From IMG/VR virus record IMGVR_UViG_3300042545_001134, positions 1 through 64,000 of that record: a DNA stretch of 64,000 nucleotides; one strand, written 5' to 3'. A model generated the notes under the pieces. It saw only the letters and a program-made list of their open reading frames with translations, was not told the DNA's origin and did no database searches. The position numbers and the translations under genes were made by a program. This document shows positions 149-63,930 of this stretch, piece after piece. Every line of letters begins with the position of its first letter. Position 1 is the stretch's first letter.

Positions 149-222
149 GGACCCTTAGCTCAGTTGGTTAGAGCAACTGACTCATAATCAGTAGGTCACA
201 GGTTCGAGCCCTGTAGGGTCCA
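149..222 (+). tRNA. tRNA with CAT anticodon, most like tRNA-Ile2 (lysidine type)
   Basis: Acceptor GGACCCT/AGGGTCC, anticodon arm ACTGA-CTCATAA-TCAGT, T-loop GGTTCGAGCC. Confidence 0.9.
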
Positions 223-226
223 CACA

Positions 227-355
227 TGTGGTCGTACACTTAACTCCAATACCCGAAAGGGAAATCGTTATGTGAAGGCCACTCCCCTTGGTAGACCTTA
301 AAAAGGGCCCTTCCGTTGGTACGACAACGGCTCGCTGGGCCCGGGTCTACTTTTT
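227..355 (+). ncRNA. Candidate structured RNA(s) inside the tRNA cluster
   Basis: GC-rich nested stems GTGGTC/GGCCAC, CCC-GAAA-GGG, GTAGACC/GGTCTAC, GGGCCC/GGGCCC, CCGTTG/CAACGG, then a T-run. Confidence 0.45.
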
Positions 356-427
356 GCGAATATCGTATAGTGGTTATTACTCCATCCTTCCAAGTTGGAG
401 ACGACAGTTCGATTCTGTCTATTCGCT
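356..427 (+). tRNA. tRNA-Gly(TCC)
   Basis: Acceptor GCGAATA/TATTCGC, anticodon loop CTTCCAA, T-loop GTTCGATTC. Confidence 0.9.
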
Positions 428-432
428 CATAT

Positions 433-503
433 TATCCTCTCGTCTAATGGCAGGACCTCAGATTTTGATTCTGATTGTCGAGGTTCGAATCCTCGGGGGA
501 TAA
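433..503 (+). tRNA. tRNA-Gln(TTG)
   Basis: Acceptor TATCCTC/GGGGATA, anticodon arm TCAGA-TTTTGAT-TCTGA, T-arm CGAGG-TTCGAAT-CCTCG. Confidence 0.9.
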
Positions 504-516
504 CTAAAAACACAAT

Positions 517-605
517 GGAAGGTTACCCAAGTTGGTGAAGGGGGCAGTTTGCTAAATTGTTAGGGTGTCACAGCCGCGAGGGTTCGAGCCCCTCACCTTC
601 CGCCA
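517..605 (+). tRNA. tRNA-Ser(GCT)
   Basis: Acceptor GGAAGGT/ACCTTCC, loop TTGCTAA, long variable arm, encoded CCA. Confidence 0.92.
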
Positions 606-1689: not shown

Positions 1690-3762
1690 ATGACGACAAG
1701 AAATTTAGTTTCCTTTCAGAAGGGTTTGGTATGTTCACCAAACGACGGTCAAGATAATAGAATCGCAGTGGCGACCGTTCAATCTCACTTAATGGAGTGG
1801 GGTTATATGTTAGACGAAGATGCATTCTTCGCATTATCCAAATCAGATTTATCGTTCATAGAGAACTTCAACAACGAAGTCGTTACACATTTGAAAAATG
1901 TAATGGGAGGTAATCGTAATTACCAACCTTTATATAAAAACTTCCCACAAGAAGTTATGTCAATGTCTGATTTCGAATTGTATATTAATGCAATTACCCA
2001 CTATTGGAGTAACGGTACTTGGGAACCATCTACCCATACTTTTGAAAAAGAAATCAAGTTTGAGAAAATCAAATACAACTTGATTAAGTATGGCACATCG
2101 GAAAGATTTTCACAAATCTTCACTGATTTGGTTTCAATTAATACATCATTGACACCTCAAGACCTTGAGATTGTTAAATGGTTCGTTAACAGTGGTGAAA
2201 CATTAGTATTCCCTAATACAATTCCATTCAAAGAGAATTTGTGTACATTGGCGGCAATGGGAATTGAGGGATTACCAGTTAAGACATCAACTGACGTGTT
2301 AAGAATCGCCGTTCATCTTTCAGGTGGAGACATCAGTTTACCTAAAGTTCCTGAAAAGGAAATTAGATTAAACAGATGGTCATCTGCAAAGGGTGAGAAC
2401 CCTGAAAGAGAAAAGTTTAAATTCAAGAAGTTCACTCGTAAAGAGAGACGTTACATCTTGGGTTTACTTGAGAACACAAACTGTGACCCACGTGAAATGG
2501 TTTTAAAAGACCAACGTTGGATTCGTTTAGGTGAAATATTACATCCAGGTGAATATAAAAATCAATTCCCAAAATCTTTTGATGCATTCAATAAGATTAG
2601 AAACGAGAAAGTAAAATCTTGGTTCTCACTTGTTAATGAAGGTTTCAATAAAGGTCTTGAGAATGGTTTGAGAGTATTGTCTCAAAAACCCGGTGAATTC
2701 GCAAGAAGAATCGATTGGTTGGTTCGTACATATCCAAAAGATATCGAAGTAATCATGACACACTTCAGCGAAACGGTAAAAGGTACATCGAACAAAGTAT
2801 TGTTTGAAGTTTACGCTCACTTTGAAAATCGTACTGAACCTATGGATAATAGGTCCGTTATGATAAAGGGGTCAAGAAAACGTACCATGTTACCATCACT
2901 ACCAGCAATCCCTAAAGAGATTGTGGAAACCATCCACTCTAAATTATTTGAAACACTTAGAGATAAGTTTTCAGTAATGGATTCTTTGGGTAACTGTTGG
3001 ATTGATGAGGAATTGAAAAAGATTCCTTTACCAACCAACATGAGAAGTATGAACTTTTCAACTAAACCAACAATCAGAGGTCAAAGAGTTCCACTCGATA
3101 ACCCTGATGCAAAAGTTATCAGACCTTTCATTCATTGGATGGATAAACATGGTAGTGAAGATTTGGATTTAAGTGTTACGTTTGTTGGTGAAAAAGTGTC
3201 AGATGTATTATCTTTCAGTAACTTGAGAGTTGGTGAATCTGTTCACTCGGGGGACGTGAGACACAGACAGGGTCCTTGTGCTGAGTACATCGACATTGAT
3301 ATGGAAGATGCATTGAACCGTGGATACAAATATGTAGTCATTGACGTGAGAAACTTCAATGGTGGTAGTTTGAATTCACTTGAAACATCTTTTGGTATCA
3401 TGGAGAGAGAACACCCCGAATCAAATAAAACATGGTTACCTGAGACAATTTCAAATTGTCAATCATTGGGGTCAACGTCGTCAAACACTTTGATTTCAAT
3501 CATTGACCTTGAAACCAAGGAGTATATCATGTTGGATATAGATTCAGAAGGTTTTGTAACCGCAAGAAGTGACTTCAAAAACACCCTTAAAGTAATTCAA
3601 CAATACGCTGAGTTACCAAAAGTAAGTGTTTACGACCTTATTCTTCTACACGTAGAAGGAAGAGGTAAACAAGTTACCCTTGACGAGAATGTGGATACAC
3701 ATTTTAAGTACGAGGACTTCTGTTACTCTTATGAAGAGACAGGAAAATTGATGGGTGTGTAA
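1690..3762 (+). CDS. Large helical-repeat protein with C-terminal TerD-like domain (resembles the MXAN_6230/SCO0854-type family)
   Basis: KPGEFARRIDWLVR, DLDLSVTF, HSGDVRH..AEYIDID motifs; family assignment from memory. Confidence 0.6.
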   Translation: MTTRNLVSFQKGLVCSPNDGQDNRIAVATVQSHLMEWGYMLDEDAFFALSKSDLSFIENFNNEVVTHLKNVMGGNRNYQPLYKNFPQEVMSMSDFELYINAITHYWSNGTWEPSTHTFEKEIKFEKIKYNLIKYGTSERFSQIFTDLVSINTSLTPQDLEIVKWFVNSGETLVFPNTIPFKENLCTLAAMGIEGLPVKTSTDVLRIAVHLSGGDISLPKVPEKEIRLNRWSSAKGENPEREKFKFKKFTRKERRYILGLLENTNCDPREMVLKDQRWIRLGEILHPGEYKNQFPKSFDAFNKIRNEKVKSWFSLVNEGFNKGLENGLRVLSQKPGEFARRIDWLVRTYPKDIEVIMTHFSETVKGTSNKVLFEVYAHFENRTEPMDNRSVMIKGSRKRTMLPSLPAIPKEIVETIHSKLFETLRDKFSVMDSLGNCWIDEELKKIPLPTNMRSMNFSTKPTIRGQRVPLDNPDAKVIRPFIHWMDKHGSEDLDLSVTFVGEKVSDVLSFSNLRVGESVHSGDVRHRQGPCAEYIDIDMEDALNRGYKYVVIDVRNFNGGSLNSLETSFGIMEREHPESNKTWLPETISNCQSLGSTSSNTLISIIDLETKEYIMLDIDSEGFVTARSDFKNTLKVIQQYAELPKVSVYDLILLHVEGRGKQVTLDENVDTHFKYEDFCYSYEETGKLMGV

Positions 3763-4651: not shown

Positions 4652-4684
4652 GGGGGGTTGGATTTGTCTAACCTCCTTTTTTTT
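4652..4684 (+). terminator. Rho-independent terminator
   Basis: GGGGGGTTGGA/TCTAACCTCC stem plus T-run. Confidence 0.7.
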
Positions 4685-4711: not shown

Positions 4712-5470
4712 ATGAGAATTGTATGTATATCGGATACTCACGGACTCCATAAAAAAATGGAGTTTTTTAACCCATTACCTGAAGGTGATATTTTAATTCA
4801 CGCGGGTGACTGTACCAATGTTGGTAAACCTCATGAGGTTAAAGAATTTGTTGAGTGGTTTCAAAACGTAAAAGGATTTGAAACAAAAATCTTTATTGCG
4901 GGAAACCATGATTGGTCATTCCAAAAAGTTAATGAACCCCACCACTCAGGTGATTATGATTGGTTCCGTCATTTAATCAATGAAGAGAATCTATCCCAAT
5001 CTGATGTGACATATTTAGAGGACACCAATTTTACAATTGAAAGTTCAGAGTTTTCAAAACCAATAAAAATCCACGGTAGTCCATGGCAACCTAATTTTTA
5101 TGATTGGGCATTTAACCTACCAAGATTGGGTGATGAGATTAAAAGTAAATGGGATATGATTCCCGATGATACCGATATTTTAATCACACACGGTCCACCA
5201 CATGAAATCAGAGATTTTGTCAGTAATTGGAGACAAGGTGATAGGAACGTTGGGTGTGAATTATTGAGGTATGAATTGGATAATAGAATCAATCCACTAA
5301 TACATGTGTTTGGACATATCCACGGTGCATACGGTGCCACATACATTAAAGATACTCTTTATGTGAACGCATCAACCTGCACAGAAGGATACGTACCATC
5401 AAATAAACCAATCGTTATTGACGTAACAGAGAATGACGGTAAATTAATCGCAACGTATGTCGAAATATAA
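4712..5470 (+). CDS. Metallophosphoesterase (calcineurin-like)
   Basis: ISDTHG, HAGD, IAGNHD, ITHGPP, FGHIH motifs. Confidence 0.9.
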   Translation: MRIVCISDTHGLHKKMEFFNPLPEGDILIHAGDCTNVGKPHEVKEFVEWFQNVKGFETKIFIAGNHDWSFQKVNEPHHSGDYDWFRHLINEENLSQSDVTYLEDTNFTIESSEFSKPIKIHGSPWQPNFYDWAFNLPRLGDEIKSKWDMIPDDTDILITHGPPHEIRDFVSNWRQGDRNVGCELLRYELDNRINPLIHVFGHIHGAYGATYIKDTLYVNASTCTEGYVPSNKPIVIDVTENDGKLIATYVEI

Positions 5471-6450: not shown

Positions 6451-6857
6451 GGGGATGAATGGAATTGATTGGCGTTGGTATTGTACGTGGGCACGTAGTC
6501 GGATGTCATCTACGACTTAAATAAATGGTGGTAACAATTAGACGGCAACGTTTACAACAACATGGAAGTAGCTGGTTTACTAGCAACTTCTAAGGTGGCA
6601 GCCTAACCGCTCCCACTGGACGGGTCGATGGACATATAACCTTGGAACAGAAGTCCTCACGGTGTGGTACCTACCCAAAAAGGTACAAATGGTCTCGTTC
6701 AGAGTGCTACCATAAAAAAAGTGAACTCGACACAGTTTCTGATAACGATGTCAAAATAGGAATCAGATATTTGTCGGTTGTGAATAATCGAATAAACGTG
6801 TAGTCCATTTATGGTATGGCGAACAAGACGAGGGTTCAAATCCCTCCATCTCCACCA
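6451..6857 (+). ncRNA. ssrA: tmRNA; tag (A)GNVYNNMEVAGLLATSKVAA
   Basis: 5' GGGGATGAATGG, 3' T-arm GGTTCAAATCC and acceptor CATCTCCACCA, tag ORF 6544-6606, TACCTTTG promoter upstream. Confidence 0.95.
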
Positions 6858-17185: not shown

Positions 17186-17331
17186 TATATATTCTTCGTT
17201 AATTTTGTGTTGCATAATAATAAATACTTGGTAAAAGAGTATTTTCCTAAAAAAGAACTCCCCCATTTTATTGGGGGAGCGTGGTTTTATAATATTAGGG
17301 TAAGTCCCTTTAGGGGGGTTAAATAAGTGAG

Positions 17332-17565
17332 TTACTCAACTCTAAAATCGTTGTTTTCTTTACTACTAATTTCGTTATCTTGTTTCATACCCTCTTTAAT
17401 GTAGGTACGTATTAGTTTAGAAACACTCATATTCTTCTTAGTGGCAACTTTCTCGATTTCTCGAAAATACGCCGGTACTACTCTAAATGACAACATTTGT
17501 ACCAATTGTTTCGATTTTGGTACGTCAGGTGTATGTGTATCTTCGTTAAAATTATTGATTTCCAT
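17332..17565 (-). CDS. Ribbon-helix-helix DNA-binding protein
   Basis: MLSFRV..IEKVATKKNMSVSKLIRTYI. Confidence 0.65.
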   Translation of the reverse strand: MEINNFNEDTHTPDVPKSKQLVQMLSFRVVPAYFREIEKVATKKNMSVSKLIRTYIKEGMKQDNEISSKENNDFRVE

Positions 17566-60752: not shown

Positions 60753-61097
60753 TTAGGGGTTATTTTTAGAATCATAAACCAATGGTTCCTCACATACCGG
60801 ACACTCATCCAGTACAATCATATTGTTCCTGCGGAACGACCAACGTTCCACGGTAGGTAATTCATCTACTGTAAGAACCGTATAACCATCCATACATTTT
60901 ACTTCACCATCTATATCATAGTACCTACCTTTATACCTTGTTACTATATGGTTTTTTCTTTGAGAAATATATGGGGTACAATCTTTATACATCTTCTTTA
61001 GTAGGATATGAAACCTATAACATCCTCCTTCGGTATAGATGTATCTTATGTACCCATCTGTATTTCTCAGTTCATCTATGAATGTTAGTATATTCAT
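60753..61097 (-). CDS. Hypothetical protein
   Basis: GGCYRF..YYDIDG; C-terminal CPVC. Confidence 0.75.
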   Translation of the reverse strand: MNILTFIDELRNTDGYIRYIYTEGGCYRFHILLKKMYKDCTPYISQRKNHIVTRYKGRYYDIDGEVKCMDGYTVLTVDELPTVERWSFRRNNMIVLDECPVCEEPLVYDSKNNP

Positions 61098-61118: not shown

Positions 61119-61403
61119 CTATATGGTATTATTGGAATCAACTATCCTTCTATACAATTCATGTTGTAATCTATAAGTCTCTAATCTTTGTTGTTCTTCA
61201 TTAATAGTTATGGTATTATTCTCAATTGGATTGTGTCTTCTTCTATATCGTTCATGACGTATTCTATAACTTTCTTCTTCTGCCTCTATACCATACCTTA
61301 ACGTATCTCTTATTCTTCTTCTTACAGATTCTTCTAATTCATTGGGATATACTTCTATTATACTATTATCAATATATCCCCTGCCAAGTTTAAAATTGTT
61401 CAT
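61119..61403 (-). CDS. Hypothetical protein (MNNFKLGRGY N-terminus)
   Basis: Shares its first 10 aa with the 61413 gene. Confidence 0.6.
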   Translation of the reverse strand: MNNFKLGRGYIDNSIIEVYPNELEESVRRRIRDTLRYGIEAEEESYRIRHERYRRRHNPIENNTITINEEQQRLETYRLQHELYRRIVDSNNTI

Positions 61404-61412
61404 ATATATGGT

Positions 61413-61697
61413 TTAAGACATAAGACTGTCTATTATTTTATCCTGTAATTCAAATATACTATCCATGTTGATATTATCATAATTCAATTCCTCCATAACG
61501 TATTCTGCCCAAACAATATAGTGGGTAAACGTGAGATTATCCTTTATTGATACAATATCCGTGGCAACCCTATTAAACCCCTCATATTTTATCTCAATAC
61601 GGATTGTGGTTTCATCTATATGATATAGTATTATCGATAACCCATATTGGGATATGATTTTGGTATTATATCCCCTGCCAAGTTTAAAGTTGTTCAT
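61413..61697 (-). CDS. Hypothetical protein (MNNFKLGRGY N-terminus)
   Basis: Shares its first 10 aa with the 61119 gene. Confidence 0.6.
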   Translation of the reverse strand: MNNFKLGRGYNTKIISQYGLSIILYHIDETTIRIEIKYEGFNRVATDIVSIKDNLTFTHYIVWAEYVMEELNYDNINMDSIFELQDKIIDSLMS

Positions 61698-61753
61698 ATA
61701 TATGGATTTCTTCAATTTATAGGTTTTAACCCCCTCGATTTTATATCTACACC

Positions 61754-61872
61754 ATAAACAACGTAGAGATACTTATATTATAAAAGTAATCACAGTTGTA
61801 TATACCTTTCAAATTGTGATTATAAACAACTGCAGAACAAATATCAACCTGTGTAGAACAGTTGTATACACC
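61754..61872 (-). CRISPR. Mini-array downstream of cas: half repeat (61861-61872), 30-nt spacer, divergent 36-bp repeat (61795-61830), 32-nt spacer, 9-nt repeat stub
   Basis: Plus strand GTTGTATACACC and GTTGTATATACCTTTCAAATTGTGATTATAAACAAC match the main repeat. Confidence 0.75.
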
Positions 61873-61985
61873 AATAAAAAGTATTTAGTGAGTGGGTTAT
61901 TACCCCGAGATTATCTCCTCCTGTTTATTCAGGGAATCACTATGGGTTGTACAACCAACCCCATCACTTGTGGTGATGAAAATAT
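61873..61985 (-). ncRNA. Guide scaffold copy 1 (omegaRNA/sgRNA-like), overlapping the cas 3' end
   Basis: Homologous to 63751-63868; hairpin GGGTTG-GTTGTA-CAACCC on the minus strand. Confidence 0.7.
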
Positions 61986-63327
61986 CTTGTTTTTTCTGTA
62001 GACCTTTTAATAGTCTACCTTTCTTACTCTTACCTTTTACTTCGTTACCTTCAGCGTAAGTTATATTATATGCCCCAACAATATCGGCATCCTTTAGTTT
62101 ACCGTAATCGTCACACTCAATGTTAATACAGGTGAATTTGGTTTTATCCTTATCCTTTCTATTCTCCTTATCCACATTCTTACAAGTTGGACATGTAATA
62201 GATGTATCTTTTGGATTCACCCACAGGATTTGAATCCCCACCATCTTTGCTTTATATTCAATATCCGTTTGAAGTTGATAATATGCCCACGATTTTAAAA
62301 ACAAATCTTTAGTGTTTGTGGTTATACCAGTTAAGTCCTCCATCTTAATAATACCCACATTGTATTGTTGGGCAATATCAATAACATCCCTACTGATATC
62401 GTGATTCATTAACACGGACCAATTGTGTTCCTTTTCCTTTAATCTTTCCATTCCCAACATCTTTCTTGTTCTTCCATGTCCACCCTTGGCAAACTTCATG
62501 GATTGTTGAAGTGCTCTTCGTATCTTATAGAACTTCATTCTCTCAGTTTGAATCTTTTCACCGATTGAAATCTGTGATGGTTGATGTTTCTCCCCGTCAA
62601 TGTATATTGATACTGGTCTGTTTATACCCAAATCAATTCCCATTACCTTATCAGGAATCATATCCTTTGATTTTGTATCAGGTACTGTACATGTTAATAA
62701 TAAAATAAAATCTTCATCCTTAATTTGAATAGAACTGGTGTTCATTTTGTATTCACCATTCAATATTCTATTGACAATTTTTTCATTACCACTTCTATCC
62801 CTTCCGTAATGTAATTTGAATTTAATTCCTTTGTGAATACTTCTCTCTGATGACGATAATGGTAAGTTAAAAACATAATCCTCCCCTTCTTTACTCACCA
62901 CAGGTTCTTTATTTACCGTACCTTTAAATGGTATTGTTAATGATGTTTTTCTAAATGATGGTATTGACATCTTTCCTTGTAAAATATCATAAAAACTCTC
63001 ATCAATAGTTTTATATATCTTTTGACAAAACGACGATTTTATGTTCGATGATATGATGGTATTTTTCTTCATTAAGTTATAACCCATATTCTCCACCATC
63101 GCCCCGTATTTTTCCTTGAAAATCTCTTTTGATTTAACTTTAGTAATATTAGTTGAATTTTTTATCTCATCCAACTCGTACTGGTTACAAACAGTTAACC
63201 TAATAACTTCGTTTCCAATTTGAACCAAGTCAGATGCAATTCTTTTTACGTAATTGTACGATGCAGTTCTGTCCTTGCTGGTTTCACCAACCGCAATCAA
63301 TTTGATTTTTCTTGTGATTATTGACAT
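61900..63327 (-). CDS. cas12f: Compact type V effector, Cas12f (Cas14)/TnpB-derived RNA-guided nuclease, 475 aa
   Basis: RuvC-I VMGIDLG, GGHGRTRK, RuvC-II KMEDL, W.YYQLQ..IEYKA, Zn finger CPTC..C...EC, RuvC-III DADIVGAYNI; adjacent array. Confidence 0.85.
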   Translation of the reverse strand: MSIITRKIKLIAVGETSKDRTASYNYVKRIASDLVQIGNEVIRLTVCNQYELDEIKNSTNITKVKSKEIFKEKYGAMVENMGYNLMKKNTIISSNIKSSFCQKIYKTIDESFYDILQGKMSIPSFRKTSLTIPFKGTVNKEPVVSKEGEDYVFNLPLSSSERSIHKGIKFKLHYGRDRSGNEKIVNRILNGEYKMNTSSIQIKDEDFILLLTCTVPDTKSKDMIPDKVMGIDLGINRPVSIYIDGEKHQPSQISIGEKIQTERMKFYKIRRALQQSMKFAKGGHGRTRKMLGMERLKEKEHNWSVLMNHDISRDVIDIAQQYNVGIIKMEDLTGITTNTKDLFLKSWAYYQLQTDIEYKAKMVGIQILWVNPKDTSITCPTCKNVDKENRKDKDKTKFTCINIECDDYGKLKDADIVGAYNITYAEGNEVKGKSKKGRLLKGLQKKQDIFITTSDGVGCTTHSDSLNKQEEIISG

Positions 63328-63351
63328 ATCATGTTCTATTTTATGTTCATC

Positions 63352-63692
63352 GTTATATTAAAAACTTCAAGTAAGAGGTATTTACAACATAAATCCCATT
63401 AGTTCGTATGGGTTCGTAGTTGTATACACCTTTCAAATAAGAGGTATTTACAACGTACTTGATGACCTGCAACAGGTCCATCAGTTGTATACACCTTTCA
63501 AATAAGAGAAACCCAAAGTACATGTTGTATACACCTTTCAAATAAGAGGTATTTACAACGTTTTCTCTTTCCCATGAGGTGCATCACCTGTTGTATACAC
63601 CTTTCAAATAAGAGGCATTTACAACTATTAACGGATGTACCAAAAATTAACATATAGTTGTATACACCTTTCAAATAAGAGGCATTTACAAC
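63352..63692 (-). CRISPR. CRISPR array, 36-bp repeat GTTGTAAATACCTCTTATTTGAAAGGTGTATACAAC (minus strand), 6 repeat units, 29-31-nt spacers
   Basis: Plus-strand repeats at 63352 (degenerate), 63419, 63484 (truncated to 25 bp), 63524, 63590, 63657. Confidence 0.95.
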
Positions 63693-63750
63693 ATGGTTAA
63701 CCCCATCTTATTATGAATCAACATATTGTGAATGATTCCCTTATTAAAAA

Positions 63751-63895
63751 ATAAAAGGTATTTAGTGAGTGAGAAGTTAATCTCCAGAAAAATTCCATCC
63801 TGTTTATTCAGGATTCACTATGGGCTGTACAACCAGCCCCACCAAAGTTTTACCTCTGATGAAAATATATTGAAGTTTCCAATATTTCAAAGAAC
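63751..63895 (-). ncRNA. tracrRNA-like scaffold copy 2
   Basis: Hairpin GGGCTG-GTTGTA-CAGCCC with loop complementary to the repeat 3' end; anti-repeat TAAATACCTTTT. Confidence 0.75.
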
Positions 63896-63899
63896 AATA

Positions 63900-63930
63900 C
63901 AAAGATACGTGTATTTTTTAGATATCCAAA
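63900..63930 (-). promoter_or_regulatory. Bacteroidota sigma70 promoter driving tracr-array-cas
   Basis: Minus strand TTTG-N19-TATCTTTG. Confidence 0.8.

What the first reader, a model, noticed from the sequence alone, without database searches (positions are those of the whole stretch)
61754..63930. Phage mini-Cas12f locus with two homologous scaffold RNAs: a snapshot between TnpB/omegaRNA and tracrRNA-crRNA systems
Seen: a single minus-strand unit runs promoter, boxA, scaffold 2, 36-bp array, intact-RuvC 475-aa effector, scaffold 1 overlapping the ORF end, half repeat, spacer, divergent repeat. The scaffolds (61873-61985 and 63751-63868) keep hairpins through compensatory changes. These are GGGTTG/CAACCC versus GGGCTG/CAGCCC around an invariant GTTGTA loop complementary to the repeat 3' end TACAAC, and GGG/CCC versus GAGA/TCTC; CCTG/CAGG is unchanged. 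Established: TnpB omegaRNAs overlap the gene 3' end, and the Un1Cas12f1 tracrRNA has a similar loop-repeat pseudoknot (from memory GGUGGGCUG-CUUGCAU-CAGCC). Inference: one nuclease loaded by two RNA routes. It is a candidate compact genome editor and an evolutionary intermediate.
Basis: partly seen in the sequence, partly recalled or inferred. Interest (0 to 1): 0.9.

Follow-up and report, generated by a model that had tools for sequence, protein, structure and literature searches.

The report
Jumbo-phage Cas12f locus, duplicated guide scaffolds
A giant phage carries a miniature CRISPR nuclease (Cas12f type) flanked by two copies of its helper RNA, one of them fused directly to a guide like a natural single-guide RNA. 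The fused copy is a recent duplication inside a normal Cas12f family, not a leftover from the transposon ancestor.

Summary
On the minus strand lie one Bacteroidota-type promoter, a boxA-like element, scaffold 2, a six-repeat array of 36-nt repeats and a 475-aa Cas12f1-like ORF with intact catalytic and zinc residues. Then come scaffold 1 (overlapping the ORF end), a 12-nt repeat remnant, a 30-nt spacer and a second repeat type.

The scaffolds are a real structured RNA. Across 25 copies from related phage contigs, 97.7% of pair cells are paired and 18 of 25 pairs show compensatory changes. The pseudoknot loop co-varies with the repeat 3' end.

The fold matches AsCas12f and Al3Cas12f (TM about 0.75) better than TnpB or LaTranC (about 0.5).

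The "TnpB-to-CRISPR snapshot" reading is not supported:
- The family sits among CRISPR-associated Cas12f1 proteins.
- The window's clade is nested among relatives that have only the upstream module.
- Scaffold 1 groups with its own clade's scaffold 2.
- The ORF overlap is a 25-aa, predicted-disordered extension absent from the 13 loci outside that clade (and from L011 within it).

Scaffold-plus-array modules were apparently duplicated independently three times. Scaffold fused to a half repeat and a variable guide recurs across the family, so a natural single-guide route beside a tracrRNA:crRNA route is plausible but untested. No protospacers, no PAM and no expression data were obtained.

The parts
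63900..63930 (-). Bacteroidota-type promoter: -33 TTTG, 19 nt, -7 TATCTTTG
   Evidence: It is the only full TTTG-N17-23-TAnnTTTG match on this strand between 61700 and 64000. Both boxes are conserved upstream of scaffold modules in relatives (A5). The consensus itself is recalled from memory.
63885..63895 (-). boxA-like element GTTCTTTGAAA, a putative Nus antitermination site
   Evidence: It is the only match on the minus strand of the whole window. The form GTTC[AT]TT[GAT]A[AC]A is conserved before 11 of 12 aligned modules. It matches the Legionella CRISPR boxA at 10 of 11 positions (PMC7862264).
63748..63873 (-). Scaffold 2: a tracrRNA-like RNA with stem 1, a pseudoknot hairpin (loop GTTGTA), a closing helix AGTGA/TCACT, stems 3 and 4, and the anti-repeat AAATACCTTT
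   Evidence: cmsearch gives 135.3 bits, E 1e-30. Covariation is shown.
63693..63747 (-). Linker between scaffold 2 and the first repeat, conserved in close relatives and possibly a degenerate first unit
   Evidence: Read directly.
63353..63692 (-). CRISPR array: six 36-nt repeats, one 5'-truncated and the last degenerate. It holds four spacers of 29-31 nt and one truncated spacer.
61900..63327 (-). cas12f-like gene, 475 aa. Invariant residues include RuvC D232, E330 and D415, and zinc-finger cysteines C379, C382, C400 and C405. Residues from about 451 to 475 are an extension encoded by scaffold 1.
   Evidence: Pfam PF07282 at 1.4e-14. PDB sequence match 1e-48 to Al3Cas12f. Invariant columns. 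AF2 mean pLDDT 81.6 with the tail below 50. Foldseek TM 0.76-0.77 to AsCas12f.
61871..61990 (-). Scaffold 1: a paralogous scaffold overlapping the last 91 nt of the ORF, with no promoter or boxA of its own
   Evidence: cmsearch gives 117.8 bits, E 3e-26. The minimum-energy fold reproduces the helices. No promoter or boxA is found.
61861..61872 (-). 12-nt repeat remnant GGTGTATACAAC, joined to the scaffold-1 anti-repeat by an 8-nt loop
   Evidence: The same junction occurs in L001, L005, L006, L008 and L009, and with longer loops in L121, L122, L129 and L008 scaffold 2.
61831..61860 (-). 30-nt spacer covalently downstream of scaffold 1: the guide of the putative natural single-guide RNA
   Evidence: The guide differs among relatives. 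No protospacer was found.
61795..61830 (-). Full 36-nt repeat of a second type (B), sharing the 3' half with type A
   Evidence: The same type forms the main array of L005.
61765..61794 (-). Sequence after the last repeat. It could be read as a further guide, but no repeat follows it.
   Evidence: There is no second copy in the window.

Best explanation
This is a stand-alone type V-F (Cas12f1 / V-U3-like) CRISPR locus of a roughly 310-kb phage, probably infecting Bacteroidota. It has no adaptation genes nearby.

One promoter followed by a boxA-like element probably drives a single long transcript: scaffold 2, array, cas12f, scaffold 1 with its guide, repeat B.

Scaffold 2 acts as a tracrRNA. 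Its anti-repeat (AAAUACCUUU) pairs with AAAGGUGUAU of each repeat. Its hairpin loop (GUUGUA) pairs with the repeat's last six bases (UACAAC) to form the guide-proximal pseudoknot typical of Cas12f and TnpB guide RNAs.

Scaffold 1 lies in the 3' end of the cas12f mRNA. It is joined through an 8-nt loop to the 3' half of a repeat and a 30-nt spacer. The nuclease could therefore carve a ready-made single-guide RNA out of its own message, as TnpB does with omegaRNA.

Scaffold 1 is a lineage-specific duplicate of the upstream module. It landed on the gene's end and extended the ORF by 25 disordered residues. It is not an ancestral omegaRNA.

Shown here: the sequence architecture, the RNA structure by covariation, the protein family and fold, and the phylogenetic polarity.

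Inferred: transcription, processing, loading of both RNA forms, DNA cleavage and biological targets.
For: Protein:
- Pfam Cas12f1-like TNB domain and PDB sequence hits to Al3Cas12f, AsCas12f and other Cas12f entries.
- Invariant D232, E330, D415 and four cysteines.
- A confident AF2 model. Its best structural matches are Cas12f1 complexes at TM 0.68-0.77. TnpB and LaTranC score about 0.5 or lower.

RNA:
- 18 of 25 pairs are compensatory, and 94.7-97.7% of cells pair against 78% in shuffles.
- The loop and the repeat end co-vary in four states.
- Anti-repeat tails prefer their own repeats in the divergent L120 lineage.

Single operon:
- There is one promoter and one boxA upstream of scaffold 2, and none before cas12f or scaffold 1.

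Fused single-guide layout:
- It is conserved in the window's clade and also in L121, L122, L129 and L008 scaffold 2.
- The guide is variable. L008 and L009 have identical proteins and identical upstream arrays but entirely different downstream spacers.
- Internal 5'-truncated repeats in arrays show that only the 3' half of the repeat is needed.

Derived origin of scaffold 1:
- Protein tree, scaffold tree and identities, stop-codon positions and C-terminal tails, and the disordered tail.
- L005 tolerates V-to-A and T-to-A changes in the tail, one of which restores an RNA pair.

No Cas1, Cas2 or Cas4 is found in the flanks.

The omegaRNA is described as a natural sgRNA with guide, pseudoknot and stem in PMC10097598.
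Against: - There are no expression or processing data.
- No protospacer was found for any tested spacer, so there is no PAM and no target.
- Scaffold 1 has no promoter of its own, so its abundance depends on read-through and processing.
- Its high conservation (89-94% within the clade) is partly explained by also being coding sequence.
- Ten of the 20 distinct loci work with the upstream scaffold alone (two more with a downstream one only), and L011 inside the window's clade has lost scaffold 1. The second copy is therefore dispensable.
- The fused half repeat could be a deletion scar like the truncated repeats seen inside arrays.
- The apparent independent duplications could instead reflect gene conversion between old copies.
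Confidence: 0.6

Rival explanations
1. Two redundant tracrRNA-plus-array modules and nothing more. Scaffold 1 is only a second tracrRNA serving a shrunken downstream array. The half repeat fused to it is a neutral deletion scar, not a separate single-guide loading route.
For: L120 and L129 carry two ordinary modules, and in L120 each module has full repeats. 5'-truncated repeats also occur inside arrays, so such deletions are common. Both repeat types share the same 3' half, so either scaffold could serve either array.
Against: The scaffold, loop and half-repeat junction is kept across lineages with 44-100% protein identity, with loops of 8 to about 30 nt, while the guide after it changes. Geometrically it equals an engineered Cas12f sgRNA or an omegaRNA. 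A cis-linked repeat will out-compete trans crRNAs for its own anti-repeat.
Confidence: 0.2
2. One reading: an evolutionary intermediate between TnpB/omegaRNA and tracrRNA-crRNA systems (a TranC-like state), in which scaffold 1 overlapping the ORF end is the ancestral omegaRNA and scaffold 2 with the array is the new split form.
For: The scaffold overlaps the ORF 3' end and is directly followed by a guide, as in TnpB. Type-A repeats are palindromic, and their 5' half resembles the anti-repeat. The splitting hypothesis exists in the literature (and the TranC citations).
Against: The nearest cellular relatives are all CRISPR-associated Cas12f1, and the fold is closer to Cas12f than to TnpB or LaTranC. 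Basal family members have non-overlapping downstream scaffolds, and two of them have their own promoter and boxA. The window's clade is nested among relatives with only the upstream module. Scaffold 1 groups with its own clade's scaffold 2. The overlap is a 25-aa disordered extension. There is no TnpA, no extra copies and conserved synteny. Palindromic repeats are absent from the basal L121 and L122.
Confidence: 0.08
3. Scaffold 1 is an inactive relic, preserved only because it now encodes the C-terminal tail of the nuclease.
For: It is more conserved than scaffold 2 within the clade. It has no own promoter. L011 has lost it.
Against: The tail is predicted disordered and is absent from all other family members. 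L005 changes tail residues while restoring an RNA pair. All helices and the loop, anti-repeat, half-repeat geometry are intact. The guide and mini-array behind it turn over.
Confidence: 0.07
4. Scaffold 1 with its guide is a regulatory natural single guide, comparable to the long-form tracrRNA of Streptococcus pyogenes Cas9 (recalled from memory). It would repress a phage or host promoter through partial complementarity.
For: Natural single guides with regulatory roles are known in type II systems (from memory). The unit is hard-wired to nuclease expression.
Against: There is no partial match (up to 3 mismatches in 20 nt) elsewhere in the 64-kb window. The guide differs between close relatives. 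The nuclease is catalytically intact. Only about a fifth of the phage genome could be searched.
Confidence: 0.05

Closest known systems
Type V-F CRISPR-Cas12f1 (V-U3 branch: AsCas12f, Al3Cas12f/MG119, OsCas12f, CnCas12f1, SpCas12f1)
   Same: It has the same size class, split RuvC and zinc-finger (TNB) domain. Sequence E-values are 1e-48 to 1e-29 and TM scores 0.68-0.77. There is an adjacent array of 36-nt repeats, a long structured tracrRNA encoded in the gene's orientation next to the array, and no adaptation genes. The Bacteroidaceae cousin L039 has the same order, stop codon then tracr then array, and the same rule that the loop pairs with the repeat end.
   Different: Identity to cellular members is only about 24-32%. 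The clade is seen only on phage-like contigs and in unbinned metagenome assemblies. The scaffold is often covalently fused to a truncated first repeat. Scaffold-plus-array modules are duplicated, either flanking the gene or in tandem. In the window's clade the scaffold overprints the ORF end. The family is annotated publicly only as 'IS605 OrfB transposase'.
TnpB with omegaRNA/reRNA (IS200/IS605)
   Same: A scaffold overlaps the gene's 3' end and is followed directly by the guide. It has the guide, pseudoknot and stem geometry with a short natural loop, as described for ISDra2 omegaRNA (PMC10097598).
   Different: There is no transposon context, TnpA or multiple copies. The guide is a CRISPR-type spacer followed by a repeat. 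The protein is closer to Cas12f than to TnpB (TM about 0.5-0.6 and 13-14% identity to TnpB). The overlap is a secondary event.
TranC (transposon-CRISPR intermediates; Cell 2025, known here only through citing papers and memory)
   Same: The concept is the same: one TnpB-family nuclease that can use both array-derived crRNA with tracrRNA and a single reRNA-like guide.
   Different: The solved LaTranC is a remote structural match (rank 37, TMq 0.49, 12% identity) and was not found by sequence at E up to 1. This family branches within CRISPR-associated Cas12f1, not between TnpB and Cas12. Whether it corresponds to one of the numbered TranC clades could not be checked.
Cas12n/Cas-lambda, CasPhi (Cas12j) and other phage-borne miniature type V systems
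   Same: These are compact type V effectors with small arrays and no adaptation module on (huge) phage genomes. Cas12f-like proteins have been noted in huge phages (PMC11748809). A tracrRNA lying in the ORF's C-terminal region is reported for Cas12n.
   Different: They belong to different protein families. CasPhi and Cas-lambda need no tracrRNA, as far as I recall.

Membership tests
Type V-F CRISPR-Cas12f1 | Small TnpB-like effector with a split RuvC (D/E/D) and a zinc-finger/TNB domain, homologous to characterised Cas12f | tested here: met
   PF07282 scores 54.4 bits against a cutoff of 26.3. Al3Cas12f matches at E 1e-48 and AsCas12f at 4e-36. D232, E330, D415 and four cysteines are invariant. 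Foldseek's top 15 hits are all Cas12f1.
Type V-F CRISPR-Cas12f1 | Adjacent CRISPR array in the same orientation | tested here: met
   There are six repeats upstream and a half repeat plus a full repeat downstream. Arrays were found at 19 of the 20 distinct related loci examined; L126, where the repeat search found none, has two repeat units behind its scaffold.
Type V-F CRISPR-Cas12f1 | Structured tracrRNA with an anti-repeat and a pseudoknot to the repeat 3' end | tested here: met
   The test is computational only. Covariation of five helices is shown. The loop and repeat end co-vary. The anti-repeat is complementary to the repeat.
Type V-F CRISPR-Cas12f1 | Asymmetric homodimer on one guide RNA; PAM-dependent dsDNA cleavage | not testable with these tools
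   No protospacers were found, so no PAM is available. Oligomeric state was not modelled.
TnpB/omegaRNA (IS200/IS605 element) | Located in a mobile element: transposon ends, TnpA nearby or multiple copies, variable insertion sites | tested here: not met
   The covariance model finds only the two scaffolds in 64 kb. No transposase was found in the flanking ORFs scanned. Downstream genes are syntenic in L008 and L009.
TnpB/omegaRNA (IS200/IS605 element) | Guide RNA scaffold overlaps the gene's 3' end and the guide is the adjoining sequence | tested here: met
   Scaffold 1 overlaps 91 nt of the ORF and is followed by a guide. The overlap is lineage-specific and secondary.
TnpB/omegaRNA (IS200/IS605 element) | Protein groups with IS-borne TnpBs rather than with Cas12 | tested here: not met
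   The closest cellular relatives are CRISPR-associated. TnpB structures score lower than Cas12f structures.
TranC (transposon-CRISPR intermediate) | TnpB-lineage nuclease with both a CRISPR array and a functional reRNA-like single guide | tested here: inconclusive
   The architecture fits. Use of both RNAs is untested, and the single guide here is a derived duplicate.
TranC (transposon-CRISPR intermediate) | Membership of one of the published TranC clades | not testable with these tools
   The primary paper and its sequences are not in the library. Only LaTranC is available, through the PDB, and it is remote.

The most novel reading that the evidence does not exclude
A bona fide CRISPR-Cas12f lineage in jumbo phages has secondarily re-fused tracrRNA and crRNA into an omegaRNA-like single guide embedded in the nuclease's own mRNA. 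This reverses the 'RNA splitting' thought to have created type V systems. The guide slot remains exchangeable. Whole scaffold-plus-array modules have been duplicated independently at least three times, which implies selection for two separately loaded guide pools.
Probability: 0.35. Interest if true: 0.7.

Novelty: new variant of a known kind. Interest (0 to 1): 0.55.

Why it matters
If both RNA forms load the nuclease, this family shows that the split between tracrRNA and crRNA is reversible in nature. It would also show that an omegaRNA-like, mRNA-embedded single guide can evolve convergently inside a CRISPR system. That is a caution against reading such architectures as ancestral.

It would also supply natural sgRNA junctions (loops of 8 to about 30 nt) and a phage-derived group of Cas12f orthologs of about 420-476 aa, with defined scaffolds, for editor development.

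The recurrent duplication of scaffold-plus-array modules, and the rapid turnover of the scaffold-proximal spacer without any Cas1-Cas2 found in the flanks searched, raise a question. How do phage arrays acquire or exchange spacers?

At 475 aa the protein is not smaller than existing Cas12f editors.

Tried and rejected
- Rfam at permissive E-values found no known family for either scaffold. The four hits were chance-level snoRNA and miRNA matches.
- BLAST of the locus and of the array against 50,697 GenBank phages found no homologue and only chance-level spacer hits at E 3.
- Exact searches of four spacers in IMG/VR found only the source contig.
- 124 spacers from all family arrays, searched against the window and all fetched loci, gave only matches to duplicate assemblies of the same contigs, to repeats, or to duplicated spacers within one array.
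- The scaffold-1 guide and the trailing sequence have no second site in the window with up to 3 mismatches.
- PHROGs on ten large window ORFs gave only two hits. Phage identity therefore rests on IMG/VR membership, gene density, a YunG-like protein, and the tRNA and tmRNA genes.
- The sigma-70 promoter scan was uninformative, with 20 hits against 15 expected. The Bacteroidota motif fitted instead.
- Its 'terminator' hits are scaffold hairpins.
- I considered a transposon (TnpB) reading and rejected it on context and phylogeny.
- I considered retention of an ancestral downstream scaffold. The scaffold tree and protein tree favour a new duplication, although gene conversion cannot be excluded.
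- The TranC primary paper could not be read.
Full report
**What is there**

Read on the minus strand, the locus runs in this order:
- a promoter of the Bacteroidota kind: TTTG, 19 nt, TATCTTTG (63930-63900)
- a boxA-like GTTCTTTGAAA (63895-63885)
- scaffold 2 (63873-63748)
- a 55-nt linker
- six 36-nt repeats (63692-63353), one of them 5'-truncated and the last degenerate
- a 475-aa ORF (63327-61900)
- scaffold 1 (61990-61871), overlapping the last 91 nt of the ORF
- a 12-nt repeat remnant (61872-61861)
- a 30-nt spacer (61860-61831)
- a full repeat of a second type (61830-61795)

The promoter and boxA motifs occur once each on this strand of the locus. None precedes the ORF or scaffold 1. A single operon is therefore the simplest reading. 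This is an inference.

The window is part of IMG/VR contig IMGVR_UViG_3300042545_001134, 310,691 bp. It also carries four tRNA genes and a tmRNA gene. No Cas1, Cas2 or Cas4 is found in the flanking ORFs that were scanned.

**The protein**

- Pfam finds the Cas12f1-like TNB domain above threshold.
- The best solved relatives by sequence are Al3Cas12f (E 1e-48), AsCas12f (4e-36) and other Cas12f1 entries. Un1Cas12f is weaker at 1e-16 (names from PMC13186708).
- In an alignment of 21 family members, D232, E330, D415 and four cysteines are invariant.
- An AlphaFold2 model has mean pLDDT 81.6.
- Its closest structures are AsCas12f (TM 0.73-0.77 on the target), OsCas12f (0.74-0.75), SpCas12f1 (0.71), Al3Cas12f (0.68) and CnCas12f1 (0.67).
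- TnpB structures reach about 0.5-0.6 at 13-14% identity. LaTranC is rank 37.
- Public databases call all family members 'IS605 OrfB transposase'.

**The scaffolds are a real structured RNA**

The two window copies show 83% mean column identity. Relatives were collected from IMG/VR, JGI metagenomes and other assemblies.

A MAFFT alignment of 15 scaffold copies gives five helices with 25 pairs, 18 of them with compensatory changes. In that alignment 94.7% of cells pair against 78% in shuffles, and 0 of 500 shuffles reach the observed values. Sliding the partners drops pairing to 35-50%.

A covariance model built from this alignment finds exactly two copies in the window and nothing at the distant TnpB and Cas12f loci searched (L020-L052 subset). 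On 25 copies the figures are 97.7% paired and a covariation score of 0.565 against 0.19. That alignment is fitted to the model, so the MAFFT result is the fairer one.

The hexamer loop of helix 2 is complementary to the last six bases of the cognate repeat, and the two change together:

| Loci | Loop | Repeat 3' end |
|---|---|---|
| Window and most relatives | GTTGTA | TACAAC |
| L120 | GTTGTG | CACAAC |
| L122 | GTTGTT | AACAAC |
| L039 (Bacteroidaceae cousin) | GTTGGA | TCCAAC |
| L016 (L017's loop is also GTTGTT; repeats not tabulated) | GTTGTT | TACAAC (5 of 6) |

Directly after the invariant CACTCAC comes an anti-repeat, AAATACCTTT. It pairs with AAAGGTGTAT of the repeat. In the divergent L120 lineage, tails and repeats have changed together.

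This is the guide, pseudoknot and stem layout described for Cas12f sgRNA and for ISDra2 omegaRNA (PMC10097598).

**The fused unit**

In scaffold 1 the anti-repeat is joined by eight bases to the 3' half of a repeat and then to a spacer. The minimum-energy fold shows all scaffold helices, a terminal anti-repeat:repeat hairpin, and the ACAAC end free for the pseudoknot.

The same junction is present in every member of the window's clade that keeps scaffold 1. With longer loops it also occurs in L121, L122, both copies in L129, and the upstream scaffold of L008. The sequence after the junction varies.

L008 and L009 encode identical proteins and share an identical upstream array, yet their downstream units hold completely different spacers.

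Arrays in the window and in L001 contain internal repeats that have lost their 5' half. This fits the rule that only the 3' half of the repeat is used.

The window's downstream 'divergent' repeat is the repeat type of L005's main array.

**Polarity**

Among one representative genome per species of bacteria and archaea, the best matches are only about 31-35% identical. The cellular relatives examined carry adjacent arrays. One of them (L041) sits next to an unrelated-looking array.

In L039 the tracrRNA begins right after the stop codon and precedes the array.

In the protein tree the phage family is monophyletic (100/100) and sister to the Bacteroidaceae proteins, though with weak support (83/72). 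The branching order within the family is:
- L122, basal, with a downstream module only
- L120 (flanking modules), and L121 with L129 (downstream modules; tandem in L129)
- a large clade in which eight lineages have only the upstream module, with the window's clade nested inside it (earlier version)

Across 20 distinct loci, ten have the upstream module only, two have the downstream module only, and eight in three lineages have two modules.

In each two-module lineage the two scaffolds are each other's closest relatives: 88% in L129, 74% in L120 and 67-75% in the window's clade. The window's scaffold 1 is only 49-62% identical to the downstream scaffolds of L120, L121 and L129.

Downstream scaffolds outside the window's clade start 10-39 nt after the stop codon. 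L121 and L122 have their own promoter and boxA.

The window-clade proteins alone carry a 25-residue extension encoded by the scaffold. That tail has pLDDT of 30-38. In L005 two tail residues change, and one of those changes restores an RNA pair.

The most economical history is three independent duplications of the scaffold module. The one in the window's lineage landed on the gene's end. Old duplicates homogenised by gene conversion cannot be excluded.

**Mechanism proposed**

1. A single promoter with a boxA-type antitermination signal drives the transcript. BoxA elements upstream of CRISPR arrays are documented (PMC7862264). The transcript contains the tracrRNA, the array, the mRNA and the fused guide.
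2. Scaffold 2 pairs in trans with repeat 3' halves.
3. Scaffold 1 is already joined to its guide and would be excised from the mRNA 3' end. TnpB is recalled from memory to do this with omegaRNA.
4. Both RNAs load the same nuclease.

All steps after the sequence architecture are inference.

No protospacer was found in GenBank phages, IMG/VR or the fetched loci. Targets, PAM and biological role are therefore open. Competition between phages is the usual expectation for phage arrays (PMC11656645).

**Comparison and novelty**

The locus is a member of type V-F by protein, array and tracrRNA criteria. It is not a TnpB element.

It resembles the published TranC idea, in which one nuclease uses both crRNA and an reRNA-like guide. 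It reaches that state from the CRISPR side. Whether the clade is among the numbered TranC clades could not be checked.

What appears new:
- a Cas12f1 clade found here only on phage-like contigs and metagenome assemblies
- natural tracr-crRNA fusions
- recurrent module duplication
- convergent overprinting of the ORF end

The 'evolutionary intermediate' claim is rejected. The 'compact editor' claim is ordinary, since Cas12f editors of 400-500 aa already exist.

Noticed in passing
window 149-605 and 6451-6857: There is a cluster of four tRNA genes (Met, Gly, Gln, Ser) and a tmRNA gene with tag peptide GNVYNNMEVAGLLATSKVAA on this phage-like contig.
   Followed up: no
window 61119-61403 and 61413-61715 (minus strand): Two adjacent paralogous small ORFs both contain MNNFKLGRGY near the start. 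A similar gene start follows the locus in L009, so the downstream synteny is conserved.
   Followed up: partly
window 63484-63523: An internal repeat lacks its 5' 7-8 nt and is preceded by only about 11 nt of spacer. Similar 5'-truncated repeats occur in the arrays of L001 (near 2840) and L006.
   Followed up: partly
L129:3861-4812: A relative with 46% identity carries two scaffold-plus-array modules in tandem downstream of the gene. Each has the scaffold fused to a half repeat, and the two scaffolds are 88% identical.
   Followed up: yes
L008:4105-4300 versus L009:2619-2800: The proteins are identical and the upstream arrays share every spacer, but the downstream mini-arrays have entirely different spacers and slightly different repeats. 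The scaffold-proximal unit turns over quickly without any Cas1-Cas2 in the fetched part of either contig (3-5 kb).
   Followed up: partly
L121:4526-4551 and 4654-4679: The same 26-nt spacer occurs twice in one array, as part of a 128-nt duplication.
   Followed up: no
window 17214-17359 (minus strand): There is a weak third hit of the scaffold model at 18.5 bits, E 0.2. It is probably noise.
   Followed up: no
window 3774 (+ strand): This is the only other boxA-like match in the window, just after the 690-aa ORF 1690-3762.
   Followed up: no
whole window; L121:2592-2655, 2940-3003, 4739-4802: The motif TTTG-N17-23-TAnnTTTG occurs 21 times on the plus strand and 7 times on the minus strand of the window. 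A longer conserved promoter-like block recurs between genes in L121 and L122. Both point to a Bacteroidota host.
   Followed up: partly
window 60753-61097 (minus strand): This ORF matches the Pfam Phage_YunG-like family at E 1e-19. It is one of the few recognisable phage families near the locus.
   Followed up: no
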